NCBI GenBank assembly: GCA_023334545.1
Contig: JAADVB010000022.1
Span: forward strand, 1-64,000
Direction: 5' to 3'
DNA from: Salisapilia sapeloensis CBS 127946
Taxonomy: Eukaryota; Protista; Oomycota
DNA: 64,000 bases
Part shown: positions 51,223 through 58,326 of the stretch, piece after piece
How positions within the stretch are numbered: the first letter of the stretch is position 1
How the letters are laid out: each line of letters opens with the position of its first letter
Translations under genes and position numbers: made by a program
The notes under the pieces: model-generated
What the model was told of the DNA's origin: nothing
Seen by the model: only the letters and a program-made list of their open reading frames with translations
Databases searched by the model: none

Positions 51223-52003
51223 GCCGAGTCGGTTGTTTATCAAAGTGGTGGAACGAGTAGCGTTCGAAAAGTGTTGTGAGGGGAACGATGGGGGAGAGTA
51301 CGACGTCTCCTTGACTTCCTTCTCCCGGAGCAAAAGCTGCTTTGCGCCAGAGATGCACGCGCTGGTCCGTGGCGGATTTTACACCAATCGGAGAGGTGGG
51401 TACGCCCTACACTACAAGTTTGTATGGAAGAGGGTCGACACCAAAGCTTCAAGACGGGTGTACGAGAACGTACGACGATGTACACAAATAGGCGACTGGG
51501 AGAGTATAAGTTTCAAGCGTATCGGAAGAGAACATGGCAGCGGTTTCTTGGGATAGAACGTTATTCATCCACGGCGGGTATTCCTGAAGTTTGATACCTA
51601 TGTGGTCTATGGATCTTGAAACAGGAGTAGGCGTCTCTTGAAGTAACGCCCATCTTCTTCAAAGTCAGAAAACTCTACCGGCACAAACTCTTGCGCGTCG
51701 GAAGAAGGCGTTCGTGGCAGATACTCTAAGGATGCATTTACTGGACTTAAACCGATATAGAAACAGGATCTGTGCGCTAATGAAATTCCTCTCCCGGGAA
51801 CATGCAGGTGGCAATATGGCATTTTTGGATGGCAACGTGTGAATTGCACATGCTTGAAGCATTATCAGATAGCGATCTCAAGGTACGATGGCGGCGGTTT
51901 TCCGAGCGAGCCTGTCACGGTGTACAGACATGCTAGTCGCCCGGTGAAAGCTTACTTCATCTCTTCTTTTCACTCAGCTTTACCTTTTAACTTAAAGGGC
52001 TAT

Positions 52004-52760
52004 ATGCTACGTCCACTTACAGCACGAATGATCAAAACGAACAGTAGCAAGGTCCACTCCATTTTCAGTCGATATGCACTACCACGCGATCATCTCTAGA
52101 CCAAATTTTTAATCAGTCTAGAAAACACCGTTCTTGCATTGATCACAGCGAATGTTTGGGTCACAATGTAGTGGTTTAATACTTAAAAGTCTCGCGCTCT
52201 AATAATGTATTGGATGCTAATGTATAGGATGCTCGATCATGTTAGGACCTCCGCTGGGCACATGAACAAAGGCCGCTACTATGTCTTACGCACCCTTGTC
52301 TTCAACCGCATGGACTGCATGTACTTACGAACAAGCATGGCTTTCCTCTTTTTCAACTGGGAAATCTGCTACCTTATCGGATCCCACCGCTTCCTTGCCT
52401 TGTACCTTGGCAGCGGTGTCTTGTCTAATTTTACTCCTGTCATGAAGCAAAAATACAAGAGCAATTGCAGATCAACTTGAGAGCAAGTGGGGTTGTAAAT
52501 GGTATTATAGAAATCAGTGGGCTCCTATTCTCTCGCTCAAAACGGCACATTTTAGGCATTGCCTCCATGCGCGCTGAAGTGGCAGGCGTTCTGGCTGTCG
52601 ATCGGGTTATTTTGCATGGATATTGGATAAACGATACAATTTCAGCTACTTTGCTCATCTTAGTGGTGCTCTACTTGGAGGTGCACAGTATCTTCACCTC
52701 CGTCACGTTGATCGCTTCTTGAAAAATGATGCAAGTAAAAGTTTGATCTGGTACTCGAAC
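52004..52760 (+). pseudogene. Rhomboid (PARL-like) protease pseudogene
   Basis: VLALITANVWV, then after a probable intron GRYYVL..VF, IGSHRFLALYLGSGVLS, RASG (from GASG) and AHLSGALLG. An in-frame stop at 52097-52099 and two frameshifts (about 52465 and 52620) break it. Confidence 0.7.
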
Positions 52761-52776
52761 CTTCGATATGTTTACT

Positions 52777-53552
52777 TTATTTTCGAGTTCGAGCTTTGTA
52801 CTCGGCTGAAGTTTCCATCTTCTTCCCTTGCTTCCAAATCCCCACTTTCTTCTTTCGAGCTTGCGCTTCAAGCTTGTCAAACTTTTCTTGTTGGCCACCG
52901 TACACCGCTCCAGCCTGTCGATAGACATGCGCAAGCCCGCTTTTAAGCATCTCTTCTGAAACATTGCGACGGAATGGAAAGATGCCGTAATGAACCATGC
53001 ACACAGCTCTCGAATATTGGTCCTTGTGCAACAATGTGAGCTTAAGCTTACGATTCTGCAGCATACCTTCCAAAAAGGTACGAGCCTCGTCTCCGTATGG
53101 CTGTCCTGCATTACCAAATTTCGCCGTCTCTGGAGTGTCTATTGCATGCCGGTGGTAAGGACAATAGAGCAGTAGTGTGTCTGTAACGATGGATTACCGA
53201 TGGCAGCGAGACGGATCTGTAAAGTGTGGTCACTACGCTTACCATCGTAGGAGCCAGGTCCACGCCATAGAGGCAAGTGGCGTACACGAAAGGTGTCACC
53301 ATCTGTGCAGTGAACGTTCACTGCACGGATGGTAGCTTCTTGATTAAACAGCTTCATCGGAATGTCATCTACTGTCTTGTATCGACGGAACGGCTGACGG
53401 AGTTTCGGAATCAACAGCCCAAGGCAAATTCCGCCAGCAAAAGCCCCCCACAATGGAGCTTCTGATGGAAGATCACGGAGCAGCTGATCTTTGTGTTTTA
53501 AGACAGCATCTCGTTGCTGAGCAGATATCGGAAGGCTGTCGAGGACACCCAT
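52777..53552 (-). CDS. LCL3: Staphylococcal nuclease (TNase)-like endonuclease, LCL3-like; one intron
   Basis: TDGDTFRVRH, IRLAAI/DTPETAKFG.GQPYG, KDQYSRAV, EEMLKSGLAHVYRQAGAVYG and EAQARKKKVGIW; catalytic D/R/D/E/R residues retained. Short hydrophobic segment near the N-terminus. Confidence 0.88.
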
Positions 53553-53799
53553 TTACAATAGCGAACTGAATGTCTATTTCGTGTCCGGATTATTGAAGTT
53601 GGGGAGATCTTATGCGGTTGCAGAGCTAGCCATTGTGGAGCAACGCCACGTGCATGAGATGGCGATGACGCTCCTGTAACAGTCGATCTGTCCTGCACAT
53701 AAATTGGCGATGGAGTCGATGTAAGAAGTTGGCATAAAGAACTGAAGGATCGACGTACTCATTGAAATGCATAAAAAATAAACTTTCCATCTCCTACTC

Positions 53800-56095
53800 T
53801 TCGCTTGACCTGGCATCGGGAACCGGCGTTGAATTCTTGATAGTCACGCCATCATGCAGTTGCATGTAGCCTCCGTCGACGTCAATCTAACGATAGAAGC
53901 GAGACGTTGTATCAGAGGCGATCGCAGGACCATGCGTGTGAAAATCGTCTCGTTTCGGATCTCTTCCGGGCTTCTTACATGATAGAACAAGGTACTTGTC
54001 GAGCAGCCCAATCTTTTCTGAGGTTTCAGTCATCCACGATAGATCCCAGACGTCTGGGGAATTATTATGATTTGCAAACAGCAAAAAGCTTGGGTCTGAC
54101 GGTCGAAGACCACAGATGCGAGTTGCTGCAATCACGTCGTGCGGTAGGTTACGAGTTTGAAGTAGATACTATGCAGTTTGTACATTGAACGCAGGTAGCT
54201 ACCATCACCGTCGATATACCCAGCCAAAACCTGGATTAAAACTTCACAGTCTGCTTTCAAGTATACCTCAGATGTTCCGCCATATTTGTTATCTAGTACG
54301 CGCAGTTCCTTCAGTCCATCGAGAACCAGATTTCGAATGGCGTAACGATCGCGCGATGCGTCTTCCGTCGCTACAGTGCACTCATATCGCGTGTTATTGT
54401 TGGAATTTTCTTCTGGGAGCGTTCGTGTGTGAACTTGAACTCGAAGTTTTTGGATCCCAGGAGGTAGGGCAGCATTCACATCCTCAACATATTGTTGCTG
54501 TCATTGAACAAGCTCTTCGTCATTCGTGCAGATACTAGGTCAGCCTCTGGCTACAATCGCTAGCCAGAGTCCAAGGTAATAAGGATCTACTAGCAAGTCT
54601 ATCTCTTCGTGAGGTCTGACGCGCTGTTCGTTATTGCTAGTGTCATCCTCTAGATCTGTCACAAGACAAAGATTTGATCCCAAAAGTCCTTCAGCTGCTA
54701 GCTATCCGTTTAAAGTACCCTTCTTGGGAGGCCACTTTTGACCCAATTTCCCCGTAGTCTCGGCGATAATATTCCCTTCTAAAGCCATTTGCGGATCGAC
54801 TTCATGTGGAAGGATCTCTTGGAGTATGTATTGTAGTCATTTGGGTTCGTACATGTCTTTTGAGCGAGTCGACTTAACCGGCAAACCCTCCACGCATTGT
54901 GTTTCCAACACTTTTGCTGAACTGTCATATTCTTTCCCGGTGCAGTGAAGTACTTCCCTCTTGCATTTCCTACTTTAAATGCTGAATGGACGGAATGCAT
55001 GTACAGTTCGTGTGTGGGTTATGACACAACCGCCGCACCTCACGACTACTTTGATCATATTTACGACCATTGACATGAAGTATGATTAGCGTATCCGATG
55101 CACATGTGAAAGCGTCGCTCTAACATTGTTGGAATTTGTAGTAGTCAACGTAGCTTCCTTGCGCCTCGAAGCTCTCTCCCAGCGCTAAGATATTCACTTC
55201 TTGTTCATAATATCCAAACAGTACGCCATCAACATTTAAATAACGGAGCCTTTTCACCCCTGAAATTGATCGTACTTTCGTAGGCTCTTGGTAACCAGTT
55301 GCAGGCAAATCGATTGAGGTTTGCGCGTCTTCCTTTTCTTCACCTTGCGTGTCAGGATAGTGTAGATAGCAGCAAAATGGCTTTTTCAAAAGCGTACTCA
55401 TGGCGAGCACGCAGGGAATGTAGTACCAACGACCAGAGTCGGCACACGGGATGATGACGTCGTACTCGTGTCCGAGAGGTTGCTTGTCATCTGAAGAAGG
55501 TGTAGCGTCGAGATCAACTTTAAAACCCTTATAGGAGCAACGGTAGCATTCAGCTATTCACAGCGCGCATATAGTACATCAAGATTTTCCATTGAGGCAA
55601 CCTCCGTGCATAGGTTCTCCACAATGTCCTTGGCATGTCTTCACATCAGCGTTCCCGCCTATTTCAATGTCACACTTGGCACAAACGATGCCTTCCACAC
55701 TCTTTGTCGTACGACAGTGCTCCTGGTATTGGACTTTCGGACTAACGTGGTCGAAACTCGTTGCTTGCATCTTCAGTCATATGAGATCAAATGTGGTGTC
55801 AATCAAGACAAGATCCAATCTTTAACCTAGAGTGCGATGTAGGACTGGAGAACTTGTTAGGTCGGATGCAATTTTTATGTGAGCAAAGCAGAGTACGATA
55901 GACTGCTGCAAGTTTTCAAGCTGAATGCTTGTGACTATTTTTCAATGAGCAATCTGTACTTACTTGTGGAAACCTCGAACCTATGGTAACCTAGAAGAAC
56001 AGCAGCGATAGAGTCTAGATAGAAGACATAGATAGGCAAAGATCCAATGCACTACCTTTTTGAGATCCTTCAGCAGCGCAAAGGTTTTCGTTTCA
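53800..56095 (-). pseudogene. Decayed gene: tandem PHD-like zinc fingers fused to a VMA1/HO-type intein (Hint + dual LAGLIDADG homing endonuclease)
   Basis: Block A-like GYQEPTKVRSISG..NVDGVLFG (from 55296), B-like YYKFQQ..FTCASDT (about 55110), C DPYYLGLWL (54587-54561), D NKY..VYLKAD, E QVLAGYIDGDG (54227-54201), H-like LPHDVIAATRICG and F/G FYR*IDVDGGYMQLHDGVTIKN-S (ending 53833). Upstream in frame: CAKC..CQGHC..HGGC..CTIC and CYRC..GRWYYIPC..FCCYLH. Several stops and frameshifts. Confidence 0.75.
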
Positions 56096-56204
56096 GTAGA
56101 AAATCAGTACAAAGTAGATTATCGAGATAGTCTGCAGGATAGCACGACAACTCTAAAACGGTAACCCTGAAACCTTTAAGAGACGCGGTCAGTAGACGCC
56201 TCCG

Positions 56205-57464
56205 ATGCCAAGTATCGAAGAGTCTACGGATATCTGGAGATTGGTGGAGAATCGAGTCATCGATGCGACCCCATCGGCAGCAGAACATGGCAATCAGAAG
56301 CAGAAAGTTGAGGCGAAGGATTCGTATACTCTGTTTGTCGGTTCACGTGGTGCTGGCAAGTCGTCTCTGATAAGCACCTTTCGAAATGCTTCTAAAGGTA
56401 TGTACGTCCATTGTAGATGAGCTACATTACTACATCAATATTTAAATGATCTATGTCTCTAGTGGAAGAGATCAAGCCAACGACGGCGCTCGATTATGCC
56501 TTCGTGCGTCTGAAGACGTCCAACAGACCGCTCGTGGCTCATATGTGGGAGCTTGCGATGAACAATTGTGTCGGTGATATGATTCGAGTTCCGTTAGATG
56601 AAGATAGGATTCTCAACGGAGGCGTTGTCATCGTACTCGATCTTTCAGATCCAGGCGACGTCGTACCAAATCTTGTGAAATGGCTTCTATTGCTCTACAA
56701 GGTCGTTCAGGACCTGTTGAAAGCACGTGAGAAGCGATCTGCTACGGATAAACTCGTTGTTGAGCGCTTGCGTATGTCAGCTGGAAGCAAGTTTGGCAAC
56801 GATCATCCAGACAAGTCTGAAGTAACTCCATTCCCCATCCCTCTTCTTATTCTCGGGAACAAGTTTGAGACTTTTCGAGATGAAGACAGTGCCAAGCGAA
56901 AAGGAATTATCCAAGCTCTGCGGTACTTGGCGCATGTGTATGGAGGCACTTTACTCCTCACGGGCACGAAAGATAAAGCTATGACTACTCAATTTCGTTC
57001 TATCATGAAGACTTTTGCATTCCCAAGCACTGCTTCCACCAGTTCCAAACTGACGAAAGAGGTCGATGCAAGCAAACCAGTGTACATTCCTGCGGGCTCG
57101 GACAGATTGGAAGATATTGGTATGCCTAAGGTAATCGGTCGACGTCAAGATGGCTCCAAAGATGAGCATGAAGAACGTGCGCGACAGTGGAAAAAAGTTT
57201 CCAGTGAGTACTATGTTCCGTCTGGTACTGTCAAAGACAGCGACATAGCCGTCGAGGATGAATTGGAGACCAAGGCCACGGATGACCAGGAGCAGTTTCC
57301 AGAACCCAACATCGATCGCATTCGTCAACAAAAGAGGTTTTTATCATACAAAGTTTCATGAAACCACATGAATACTAACTTAAAACTGCTTTAGAGAGGA
57401 ATTGCTTCGATATCGTGACCAGCGTCGCAAGTCCATGGGCAAGCGACTTCGATCCGCTGGATAA
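56205..57464 (+). CDS. DYNC2LI1: Cytoplasmic dynein-2 light intermediate chain 1 (retrograde IFT); 3 exons
   Basis: IWRL near the N-terminus, P-loop-like VGSRGAGKSSLI, KPTTALDY, AHMWEL, LDLSDP, PFPIPLLILGNKFETF, LRYLAH.YGGTL, IPAGSDRLEDIG and FPEPNID..R.QK/EELLRY. Confidence 0.88.
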
Positions 57465-57610
57465 TGGTCACAAGAAAATATTTCCCAAATTTCTTTTCTT
57501 TTCATATTTTCCTCCAATCCGTCGCCTACCAATAGTATATATTCTCTTTGGATTGGCTGAAAATGAAAGCTCGATCAAGAAAACACCAAAACGTAAAGAA
57601 GAAGTAGAAT

Positions 57611-58326
57611 ATGGAGTCGATCTTTGGCCTCGTGGGCAAGGACTTTGTCGTCCTCGCCGCTGACTGCAAAGTCGCACGCTCGGTGCTAGTCTACCGAGAT
57701 GATGAGGATAAGGTACTGTGTCTCTTTAGTCGCTCTGAGTAGTCTGTGGACGTAGCTAATCGCTCGTATCTTATAGATGGTCAACATGGACGATCACAAA
57801 CTGCTCGTAGGCGCCGGCCCACAGAGCGACCGGATCGCATTCTCCGAGTACATTCAGAAGAATATGAAGCTCTATGAACTTCGCACTGGTGTCTCACTAA
57901 GCGGTCCTGCTGCCGCTAACTTCGTTCGTTCGGAACTGGCGAAATTCCTTCGCAAGTCCCCCTACCAAGTCAATTTGCTCATGGGAGCTGCGGACGTGGA
58001 TAAAGAGACCGGAAAGACCACGCCGACACTCCACTGGGTTGACTACCTCGGTTCGATGGTAAAAGCCAACTATGGTGCCCACGGCTTTGGCTCGAACTTC
58101 ACCCTATCCATCTTTGACCGGGAGTGGAGGCCGGATCTGACGCTCGACGAGGCCATGGCTATGCTCAAGAAGTGCCGCGATGAACTCGAGACACGTTTCC
58201 TCGTCCGCAATGGCAAGTGGATGTTCAAGGTATTCGACTCACCCTATCATATCGTCAAAAATAATATTAACAATGTCTTTCTAGGTCGTCGACGCGAATG
58301 GTATTCGTGAAATCGAGATGTCCTAA
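57611..58326 (+). CDS. PSMB2: 20S proteasome subunit beta type-2 (beta4/PRE1); 3 exons
   Basis: MESIFGLVGKDFVVLAAD, FSEYIQKNMKLYELR, AAANFVRSELA..LRKSPYQVNLL, DYLGS, YGAHGFG and VVDANGIRE. Confidence 0.95.

What the first reader, a model, noticed from the sequence alone, without database searches (positions are those of the whole stretch)
53800..56095. Spliced tandem-PHD reader fused to a probably splicing-dead intein nuclease: a possible HO/WHO-like, chromatin-targeted endonuclease system
Upstream of and in frame with the intein are two Cys/His fingers (CAKC..CQGHC..HGGC..CTIC and CYRC..GRWYYIPC..FCCYLH) spaced like the NSD-family PHD1-PHD2 pair. Further upstream are two clean GT-AG introns (gtagtg...ttctag and gtaagt...cattcag, about 56050-55920) whose exons join in the same frame, so this was a eukaryote-style spliced gene rather than a raw viral insert. 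The intein N-terminal nucleophile reads Gly instead of Cys/Ser, the block B His is missing and the C-terminus is KN-S, with no recognisable conserved C-extein. Established: yeast HO and Torulaspora WHO proteins are free-standing, non-splicing intein derivatives joined to zinc fingers. Inference: a convergent PHD + Hint + LAGLIDADG protein could couple histone-mark reading to DNA cutting. I do not know of a described family with this architecture, but I could not search. The junction changes could also be post-pseudogenisation drift.
Basis: partly seen in the sequence, partly recalled or inferred. Interest (0 to 1): 0.82.

Follow-up and report, generated by a model that had tools for sequence, protein, structure and literature searches.

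The report
Dead zinc-finger–intein fusion gene relic
Between two ordinary oomycete genes lies the decayed remnant of one gene that joined a zinc-finger-like head to a complete intein-type DNA-cutting module, an arrangement otherwise known only from yeast HO/WHO proteins. It is a single dead copy with no intact relatives, so no working system can be claimed.

Summary
The sequence observation holds. On the minus strand, 55770-53833 is one former reading frame:
- a C4HC3 (PHD-spaced) finger, then a second Cys/His cluster and an acidic linker;
- a full-length intein module at 55296-53833, with Hint-N, two LAGLIDADG motifs and Hint-C.

A profile of its nearest relatives matches an X-joined read-through at 127 bits, colinearly. 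Those relatives are fungal GLT1/CHS inteins and free-standing Lipomyces copies; PI-SceI is the nearest solved structure.

The gene is dead: seven in-frame stops and at least three frameshifts.

The two upstream "introns" have no RNA support. The only splice joints inside the relic are GT..AG on the opposite strand, so they belong to an antisense, non-coding transcript.

Pfam and PDB sequence searches do not recognise either finger as PHD. No protein with this architecture, and no close homologue, was found among 15 billion proteins, JGI metagenome contigs or viral contigs. No duplicated target-gene fragment (the WHO hallmark) is present.

Best reading: an intein copy landed in frame in a small zinc-finger gene and the unit decayed. 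A past HO-like function is possible but unproven.

The scan has noted this same stretch before. It also has unverified notes of other inteins in this genome.

The parts
55756..55770 (-). First in-frame ATG (MQATS...) of the finger reading frame. An in-frame stop lies just upstream at 55779-55777.
55567..55683 (-). Finger 1, with C4HC3 (PHD-like) ligand spacing. It is interrupted by an in-frame TGA at 55581-55579, and a second TGA follows at 55560-55558.
   Evidence: It is the only such pattern in the six-frame translation of the window and appears in 0 of 30 shuffles. Pfam PHD does not match it. Atlas look-alikes include PHD clusters at 0.88.
55360..55548 (-). Second Cys/His cluster (C-x2-C ... 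C-x10-C ... CC-x2-H), not canonical PHD. An acidic linker follows to 55297.
   Evidence: Atlas PHD look-alikes at 0.87 are a weak lead. Pfam, PDB and homology searches found nothing. The AlphaFold2 model was useless, with pLDDT 32.
55030..55296 (-). Hint N-terminal half. Position 1 is Gly (55296-55294). Block A is 55296-55213. The block-B-like FTCASDT (55110-55075) has no His. There is an in-frame TAG at 55122-55120.
   Evidence: Profile positions 5-88 score 20.9 bits. In the six-frame scan of the whole window this piece ranks third, at E 0.016. tblastn with many family members starts at 55296.
54600..55029 (-). Middle region, where the PI-SceI DNA-recognition region would be. It has at least two frameshifts (about 54990 and about 54810) and stops at 54972-54970 and 54704-54702. 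The reading path here is uncertain and does not align to the profile.
54543..54590 (-). LAGLIDADG motif 1 (VDPYYLGLWL...). The G-D-G is lost, and a TGA follows at 54542-54540.
   Evidence: Six-frame profile hit at E 3.6e-4; alignment.
54135..54500 (-). Endonuclease core with an intact LAGLIDADG motif 2 (54242-54195). It is bounded by a TGA at 54503-54501 and a frameshift at about 54155.
   Evidence: Profile E 4.2e-15. Lipomyces P0002 matches at E 1.3e-6 among 1.84 billion representatives. Atlas gives LAGLIDADG_3/Hom_end at 0.95. The A1 profile hits PI-SceI at E 4.5e-6.
53833..54153 (-). End of the endonuclease domain plus Hint C-terminal blocks F/G (53886-53833), ending ...TIKN, with a TAG at 53889-53887. 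Ser at +1 is 53832-53830.
   Evidence: Profile positions 207-470 score 104.4 bits and end at the Asn. Family C-termini align to 53833.
53629..53832 (-). Tail after the intein: 12 codons, then a TAG at 53796-53794, then a 55-codon open piece with no recognisable domain. It abuts the promoter and 5' end of the SNase (LCL3-like) gene, whose ATG is at 53552.
55921..56055 (-).
53595..55310 (+). Low-level transcript antisense to the relic. Its GT..AG joints are 54573>54639, 54938>55006 and 55079>55142/55145. The longest ORF is 125 aa, with no Pfam hit for the two +-strand ORFs scanned (117 and 93 aa).

Best explanation
This is the non-functional remnant of a single translation unit. It encoded a short N-terminal part with one C4HC3 (PHD-spaced) finger and a second Cys/His cluster. 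That part continued in the same frame into a full-length intein module of the PI-SceI/GLT1 type (Hint-N, double-LAGLIDADG endonuclease, Hint-C), followed by a very short tail.

An intein has no start codon of its own, so it must have been translated from the finger ORF. The most likely history is that an intein copy inserted ectopically, in frame, into or near the 3' end of a small zinc-finger gene. This is the kind of event proposed for the ancestor of yeast HO/WHO. The splice residues were then lost, and the whole unit decayed to 7 stops and at least 3 frameshifts, at about 0.07 substitutions per site.

Today the locus makes no protein. It is transcribed only weakly, partly as a spliced antisense non-coding RNA.

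Shown: the identity, boundaries, frame continuity and decay of the relic, the RNA pattern, and the absence of relatives.
Inferred: the insertion history, and that it never became a maintained host function.
For: - One decayed frame is documented.
- Fingers and Hint-N share one open 145-codon piece.
- A profile built from GLT1/CHS inteins and Lipomyces copies matches the X-joined read-through at 127.5 bits over profile positions 5-88 and 207-470.
- The three best six-frame hits in the whole 64-kb window are the colinear relic pieces.
- The boundaries are fixed by many independent tblastn alignments.
- The nearest proteins are Lipomyces P0002/P0003 and true GLT1/CHS inteins at 54-82 bits, against 29 bits or less for bacterial inteins. 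PI-SceI is the best solved structure.
- G+C content is like that of the neighbours.
- The flanks are ordinary host genes: an SNase gene, cytoplasmic dynein 2 light intermediate chain (DLIC) and a proteasome subunit gene.
- No intact or partial relative with fingers plus intein was found.
- The HO/WHO origin model comes from PMC7282813.
Against: - The decay estimate makes simultaneous loss of Cys1, the block-B His and the penultimate His by neutral drift alone improbable (about 0.4%, range 0.03-2.5%). This hints at a period as an open but non-splicing protein, as expected for a domesticated fusion.
- No empty-site allele or intein-less finger gene was found to prove an insertion.
- The finger part has no detectable homologue, so its status as a pre-existing host gene is assumed.
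- The source intein was not identified.
Confidence: 0.55

Rival explanations
1. The fusion was, for a time, a functional non-splicing protein that worked like HO/WHO. An intein-derived LAGLIDADG nuclease was directed by N-terminal zinc (PHD-like) fingers, and the gene was later lost in this lineage.
For: - Gly at position 1, no block-B His and Lys before the terminal Asn. All three arising by drift alone is unlikely at the estimated decay.
- Intact free-standing Lipomyces relatives also have Gly1 and non-canonical ends, so this is a recurrent route to non-splicing intein derivatives.
- Only 12 codons follow the intein before a stop.
- HO/WHO set a precedent for intein plus zinc finger (PMC7282813).
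Against: - It is a single dead copy, with no homologue carrying this architecture in any searched collection.
- No dN/dS estimate is possible.
- The fingers are not recognised as PHD by Pfam or PDB searches.
- There is no duplicated target fragment nearby.
- The relic retains a block-G-like ...N|S end, unlike HO/WHO.
- The penultimate His is dispensable in some inteins (own knowledge), so the drift argument is soft.
Confidence: 0.25
2. It was an ordinary splicing intein inside a genuine conserved host protein (for example an NSD-like chromatin protein), and the whole host gene later became a pseudogene.
For: - It is in frame with upstream coding sequence.
- It retains the terminal Asn and a Ser at +1.
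Against: - There is no recognisable C-extein: only about 70 codons of space remain before the next gene, with no domain.
- The N-part is only about 160 residues and has no Pfam, PDB or homology match.
- Inteins normally sit in highly conserved sites of essential proteins (PMC1635734).
Confidence: 0.08
3. Two unrelated relics, a zinc-finger gene fragment and an intein fragment, lie side by side by chance or through separate insertions.
For: Same strand and same frame have a prior chance of about 1 in 6, and neither part has close relatives that would tie them together.
Against: - Finger 2, the linker and Hint-N share one uninterrupted 145-codon open piece.
- The intein part has no Met of its own, so it needed upstream coding sequence.
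- Composition is uniform across both parts.
Confidence: 0.07
4. It is a remnant of an integrated giant-virus (NCLDV) gene that carried an intein, like the PrV RPO intein in Phytophthora ramorum.
For: There is a precedent in PMC1635734.
Against: - The insert is only about 2.6 kb, between host housekeeping genes.
- No viral genes are nearby and composition is host-like.
- There is no match in viral contigs.
- The nearest relatives are fungal nuclear inteins.
Confidence: 0.03

Closest known systems
Fungal nuclear GLT1 (glutamate synthase) and CHS (chitin synthase) inteins, PI-SceI/VDE-type (Pfam Hom_end, Hom_end_hint, LAGLIDADG_3)
   Same: Blocks A, B, both LAGLIDADG motifs and blocks F/G are colinear. 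These inteins give the best pairwise scores (54-82 bits). A profile that includes the relic hits PI-SceI at E 4.5e-6.
   Different: - The relic is in an oomycete and is not inserted in GLT1, CHS or VMA1.
- Its flanks are unrelated to those exteins.
- It has Gly1, no block-B His and Lys-Asn at the end.
- It sits on a very long branch outside the fungal clade.
- It is a pseudogene.
Yeast HO and WHO proteins (PMC7282813; bioRxiv 10.64898/2026.08.13.744650)
   Same: An intein-derived Hint plus LAGLIDADG module is fused in one polypeptide to a Cys-rich zinc-finger region with several C-x2-C motifs. The N-terminal splice residue is non-canonical. The proposed origin is mis-homing into a zinc-finger gene.
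   Different: - The fingers are N-terminal and C4HC3-spaced, not C-terminal and GATA/Ash1-like.
- A block-G-like end with Asn|Ser is retained.
- It is not phylogenetically with VDE/HO.
- There is no neighbouring target gene with duplicated fragments.
- It is dead and single-copy.
Free-standing GLT1-intein-derived paralogues of Lipomyces (P0002, P0005-P0031)
   Same: These are the best database hits to the endonuclease core. Gly occupies intein position 1, and the C-terminal residues are non-canonical.
   Different: The Lipomyces proteins start 0-5 residues before position 1 and have no zinc fingers. They are intact and multi-copy. The relic is not nested among them, so the shared Gly1 is convergent.
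PrV RPO intein in a viral relic of Phytophthora ramorum (PMC1635734)
   Same: It is a degenerate intein-coding sequence in an oomycete nuclear genome.
   Different: That one sits in an ASFV-like RNA polymerase gene within a cluster of viral genes. This one has no viral context and a different extein.

Membership tests
Intein (canonical class 1, with homing endonuclease) | Hint splicing blocks A, B, F and G, colinear and flanking an endonuclease domain | tested here: met
   Profile alignment over positions 5-88 and 207-470, 127.5 bits; block view; boundaries.
Intein (canonical class 1, with homing endonuclease) | Cys/Ser/Thr nucleophile at position 1 | tested here: not met
   Gly (GGT) at 55296-55294.
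Intein (canonical class 1, with homing endonuclease) | Block B T-x-x-H | tested here: not met
   FTCASDT aligns to FTCTPDH of true GLT1/CHS inteins, with Thr where they have His.
Intein (canonical class 1, with homing endonuclease) | C-terminal His-Asn followed by Cys/Ser/Thr | tested here: inconclusive
   Asn and the +1 Ser are present, but the penultimate residue is Lys.
Intein (canonical class 1, with homing endonuclease) | In-frame insertion in a conserved host protein with recognisable N- and C-exteins | tested here: inconclusive
   The N-flank is an in-frame Cys/His region without homologues. The C-flank has no domain and very little room.
LAGLIDADG double-motif endonuclease | Two dodecapeptide motifs, each with its acidic residue | tested here: inconclusive
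   Motif 2 (LAGYIDGDG) is intact. Motif 1 (LGLWL...) has lost G-D-G in the frame read.
HO/WHO family | C-terminal GATA/Ash1-like zinc finger after the intein-like region | tested here: not met
   The fingers are N-terminal and C4HC3-spaced. Nothing Cys-rich follows the intein.
HO/WHO family | Absence of intein motif G and of exteins | tested here: not met
   A block-G-like end ...TIKN|S is retained, and about 160 residues precede the intein.
HO/WHO family | Located beside the target gene, with duplicated target-gene fragments (WHO) | tested here: not met
   blastn and tblastx of 53553-56204 against the rest of the window found no duplicated fragment.
HO/WHO family | Phylogenetic affinity to VDE/HO | tested here: not met
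   The best scores are to GLT1/CHS-type inteins. The relic is a long-branch outlier. The 122-aa core alone does not hit PI-SceI.
PHD finger (Pfam PF00628 and NSD variants) | C4HC3 ligand spacing | tested here: met
   Finger 1 only, and only when read through one stop. Finger 2 does not fit.
PHD finger (Pfam PF00628 and NSD variants) | Significant match to a PHD profile or to a solved PHD structure sequence | tested here: not met
   Pfam found no hit at E up to 10, even with X at the stops. PDB phmmer found none. The only support is Atlas leads at 0.87-0.88.
PHD finger (Pfam PF00628 and NSD variants) | Histone-tail binding cage residues | not testable with these tools
   There is no reliable alignment or model; AlphaFold2 gave pLDDT 32.

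The most novel reading that the evidence does not exclude
An oomycete independently evolved an intein-derived LAGLIDADG nuclease fused to N-terminal zinc (PHD-like) fingers and kept it for a time as a non-splicing protein. That would be a second, convergent origin of the HO/WHO design outside fungi. This locus would be its fossil, perhaps seeded by one of the resident inteins that the scan notes in this genome.
Probability: 0.22. Interest if true: 0.7.

Novelty: new variant of a known kind. Interest (0 to 1): 0.45.

Why it matters
HO and WHO are stated to be the only intein-zinc-finger fusions known (PMC7282813; restated in 2026). Their proposed origin is an intein mis-homing into a zinc-finger gene. 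This relic shows that the same kind of in-frame intein/zinc-finger junction arose in a stramenopile. It therefore gives a natural example of the postulated first step, in a lineage where cellular nuclear inteins are not described in the surveys I could read (PMC5784728, PMC1635734). Its value is limited: it is one dead copy, without relatives, so neither activity nor selection can be tested.

Tried and rejected
- Pfam on all stop-free pieces, and on finger 1 with X at the stops: no domain.
- PDB phmmer with the pieces: only a LAGLIDADG motif match at E 0.34, and nothing for the fingers.
- Homology search with the 145-aa finger/Hint piece: nothing. The length filter excludes full-length relatives.
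- HMMER over 1.84 billion representatives with the 122-aa core: only Lipomyces proteins, plus one spurious tandem-repeat protein, P0001.
- Viral contigs: none.
- JGI metagenome contigs: 36 ordinary inteins at about 26% identity, none with a match to the finger part.
- Synteny test: the DLIC orthologue loci in Lagenidium, Phytophthora sojae and an unnamed Logan oomycete-like assembly have different neighbours. None has an SNase gene or an intein relic nearby, so presence or absence at an orthologous site could not be scored.
- AlphaFold2 on the 145-aa piece: pLDDT 32, unusable.
- Maximum-likelihood tree: the relic sits on a 4.2 substitutions/site branch next to the outgroup, so it shows only that the relic is not nested in the Lipomyces or GLT1 clades.
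- A retention count at family-conserved positions (43%) was rejected as a drift test, because it mixes lineage divergence with post-mortem decay.
- The reading path through 55030-54600 could not be settled.
- The genome's other reported inteins could not be fetched for comparison.
Full report
WHAT IS THERE

Translating the minus strand of 53600-56150 in three frames shows a former ORF broken by stops and frame changes. The window is a peronosporalean-type oomycete. The downstream gene (56205 onward, + strand) is cytoplasmic dynein 2 light intermediate chain (DLIC), 58-63% identical to Pythium, Lagenidium and Phytophthora orthologues. Upstream on the other side is an SNase (LCL3-like) gene on the minus strand, with its ATG at 53552. 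A proteasome subunit gene follows DLIC.

FINGERS

From an ATG at 55770 the frame encodes C-x2-C-x12-C-x3-C-x4-H-x2-C (55683-55597). An in-frame TGA follows at 55581-55579, then C-x2-C (55578-55567) and a second TGA at 55560-55558. After that comes an open piece of 145 codons (55557-55123).

- The C4HC core occurs once in the six-frame translation of all 64 kb and in none of 30 shuffles, so finger 1 is not a chance pattern.
- The 145-codon piece holds a second Cys/His cluster (55548-55360) that does not fit canonical PHD spacing. It also holds an acidic linker and the first 58 residues of the intein.
- Pfam finds no PHD or other domain in any piece, nor in finger 1 read through with X. PDB sequence searches are blank.
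- Language-model look-alikes are mostly PHD clusters, but at 0.87-0.88, which the tool rates as leads only.

'PHD-like' therefore rests on the ligand spacing of finger 1. 'NSD-like tandem PHD' is not supported.

INTEIN MODULE

HMMER with the 122-aa core piece against 1.84 billion cluster representatives gave only two real hits, both Lipomyces proteins: P0002 at E 1.3e-6 and P0003. Searching with P0002 found three groups:
- about 35 Lipomyces paralogues;
- true glutamate-synthase (GLT1) and chitin-synthase inteins;
- more distantly, bacterial and viral inteins carrying Pfam Hom_end, Hom_end_hint and LAGLIDADG_3.

I built a profile from these sequences and scanned all 1847 stop-free six-frame pieces of the window. 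The top three hits were colinear relic pieces, at E 4e-15, 3.6e-4 and 0.016. Against a read-through with X at every break, the profile scores 127.5 bits, covering positions 5-88 and 207-470 and ending exactly at ...TIKN|S.

Many family members align their own first intein residue to 55296 and their last to 53833. A profile containing the relic hits PI-SceI as the best solved structure, at E 4.5e-6.

Residue by residue:
- Position 1 is Gly.
- The block-B-like FTCASDT has Thr where true inteins have His.
- LAGLIDADG-1 has lost G-D-G.
- LAGLIDADG-2 is intact.
- The end reads Lys-Asn followed by Ser.

DECAY

From the ATG to the terminal Asn there are seven in-frame stops: 55581, 55560, 55122, 54704, 54542, 54503 and 53889 (first base of each on the minus strand). 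There are also at least three frameshifts, at about 54990, 54810 and 54155. Seven stops in 636 codons imply roughly 0.07 substitutions per site, or about a 15% chance that any given residue changed after constraint was lost (a rough inference).

RNA

Contigs from four RNA runs of the same organism show the known introns of the neighbours, so the runs are real RNA: 53138>53198 CT..AC for the SNase gene and 56395>56461 GT..AG for DLIC. The relic is covered at lower depth, 5-12 against 14-70 for the neighbours.

All joints inside the relic are GT..AG on the plus strand, that is antisense: 54573>54639, 54938>55006 and 55079>55142/55145. The spliced plus-strand RNA has no ORF above 125 aa, and the two plus-strand ORFs scanned (117 and 93 aa) have no Pfam hit.

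Against them:
- They add no start codon.
- They leave two more stops before the finger.
- The second is shorter (43 nt) than the spliced introns verified in the laid stretch 52000-57900 (54-78 nt).
- They lie where RNA depth is about 0, next to the DLIC transcript start at about 56060-56078.

An ATG at 55770 makes upstream exons unnecessary.

RELATIVES AND CONTEXT

Nothing with fingers plus intein was found anywhere:
- Short proteins similar to the finger/Hint piece: none.
- Viral contigs: none.
- JGI metagenome contigs: 36 ordinary inteins at about 26% identity, with no match to the finger part.

The relic scores best against GLT1/CHS-type inteins (54-82 bits) and far less against bacterial ones (29 bits or less). 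In a tree it is a very long branch outside the fungal clade.

G+C content is like that of the neighbours. There is no duplicated fragment of any neighbouring gene, so the WHO-type locus structure is absent.

DLIC neighbourhoods differ in Lagenidium, P. sojae and an unnamed Logan assembly. None of them carries an intein relic, so an orthologous empty site could not be scored.

INTERPRETATION

An intein module without its own start codon, lying in one open piece with upstream Cys/His coding sequence, means the two parts were one translation unit. The N-part is short and has no homologues, and there is almost no C-flank. This is therefore not an intein in a recognisable conserved host.

The simplest history is an ectopic, in-frame landing of an intein in a small zinc-finger gene, followed by decay. 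This is the step that Coughlan et al. postulate for the HO/WHO ancestor (PMC7282813).

At the estimated level of decay, loss of Cys1, the block-B His and the penultimate His by drift alone is unlikely. Intact free-standing Lipomyces relatives also carry Gly1. A period as an open, non-splicing fusion protein is therefore a serious rival (about 0.25). There is no way here to show it was functional, chromatin-directed, or a nuclease in vivo.

Membership in HO/WHO fails on finger position and type, on the retained block-G-like end, on phylogeny and on locus structure.

EARLIER NOTES OF THE SCAN

One search lists this same stretch as an intein (s1-303208, which agrees with my boundaries). It also lists unverified reports of a PI-SceI-like intein in V-ATPase A and three inteins in Prp8 of this genome. 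If these are true, they are the obvious candidate sources of the relic. I could not fetch them.

VERDICT

The introns are unsupported. The 'system' is a single fossil. Interest is moderate: it is a new variant of a known kind.

Noticed in passing
window 53595-55310 (+): A low-level spliced transcript runs antisense to the relic. Its GT..AG joints are 54573>54639, 54938>55006 and 55079>55142 or 55145 (alternative acceptor). They appear in three or four independent RNA runs. The longest ORF is 125 aa, so it is probably a non-coding RNA divergent from the SNase-gene promoter.
   Followed up: partly
P0002, P0005-P0031 (Lipomyces spp.); locus L001 8001-10343: Six Lipomyces species carry about 27 free-standing paralogues (411-905 aa) derived from a GLT1-type intein. 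Each has its own Met. Most of those aligned residue by residue have Gly at intein position 1, ends reading VVCN, VVCD or VVFD, and intact LAGLIDADG motifs. None has a zinc finger. P0002 lies between ordinary genes. I found no paper describing this family. It looks like an HO/WHO-style domestication or a free-living homing-element family.
   Followed up: partly
Its joints are 52049>52115, 52167>52228 (alternative acceptor 52246) and 52500>52555, all GT..AG. Depth is comparable to its neighbours, so it may be intact.
   Followed up: no
window 52228-54448: One RNA contig (run X2, record 1) carries both plus-strand introns of the rhomboid gene and the minus-strand intron of the SNase gene, then runs on into the relic. 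This suggests overlapping 3' ends of the convergent genes and/or a long 5' leader of the SNase gene that starts inside the relic.
   Followed up: no
loci L002, L003, L004: The neighbours of the dynein-2 light intermediate chain gene differ between oomycetes: D123, a DEAD helicase, or a longin/synaptobrevin gene. Only the proteasome subunit gene recurs nearby. The SNase-DLIC adjacency seen here is therefore lineage-specific.
   Followed up: partly
other pieces of the same genome (notes s1-303195, s1-296260, s1-296284): Unverified scan notes report a PI-SceI-like intein in V-ATPase A and three inteins in Prp8 of this oomycete. If real, the genome is unusually rich in inteins for a eukaryote, and they are candidate sources of this relic.
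   Followed up: no
P0001: The top hit of the representatives search is a 732-aa protein made of perfect tandem repeats. It matches through a short repeated stretch only and is spurious.
   Followed up: yes
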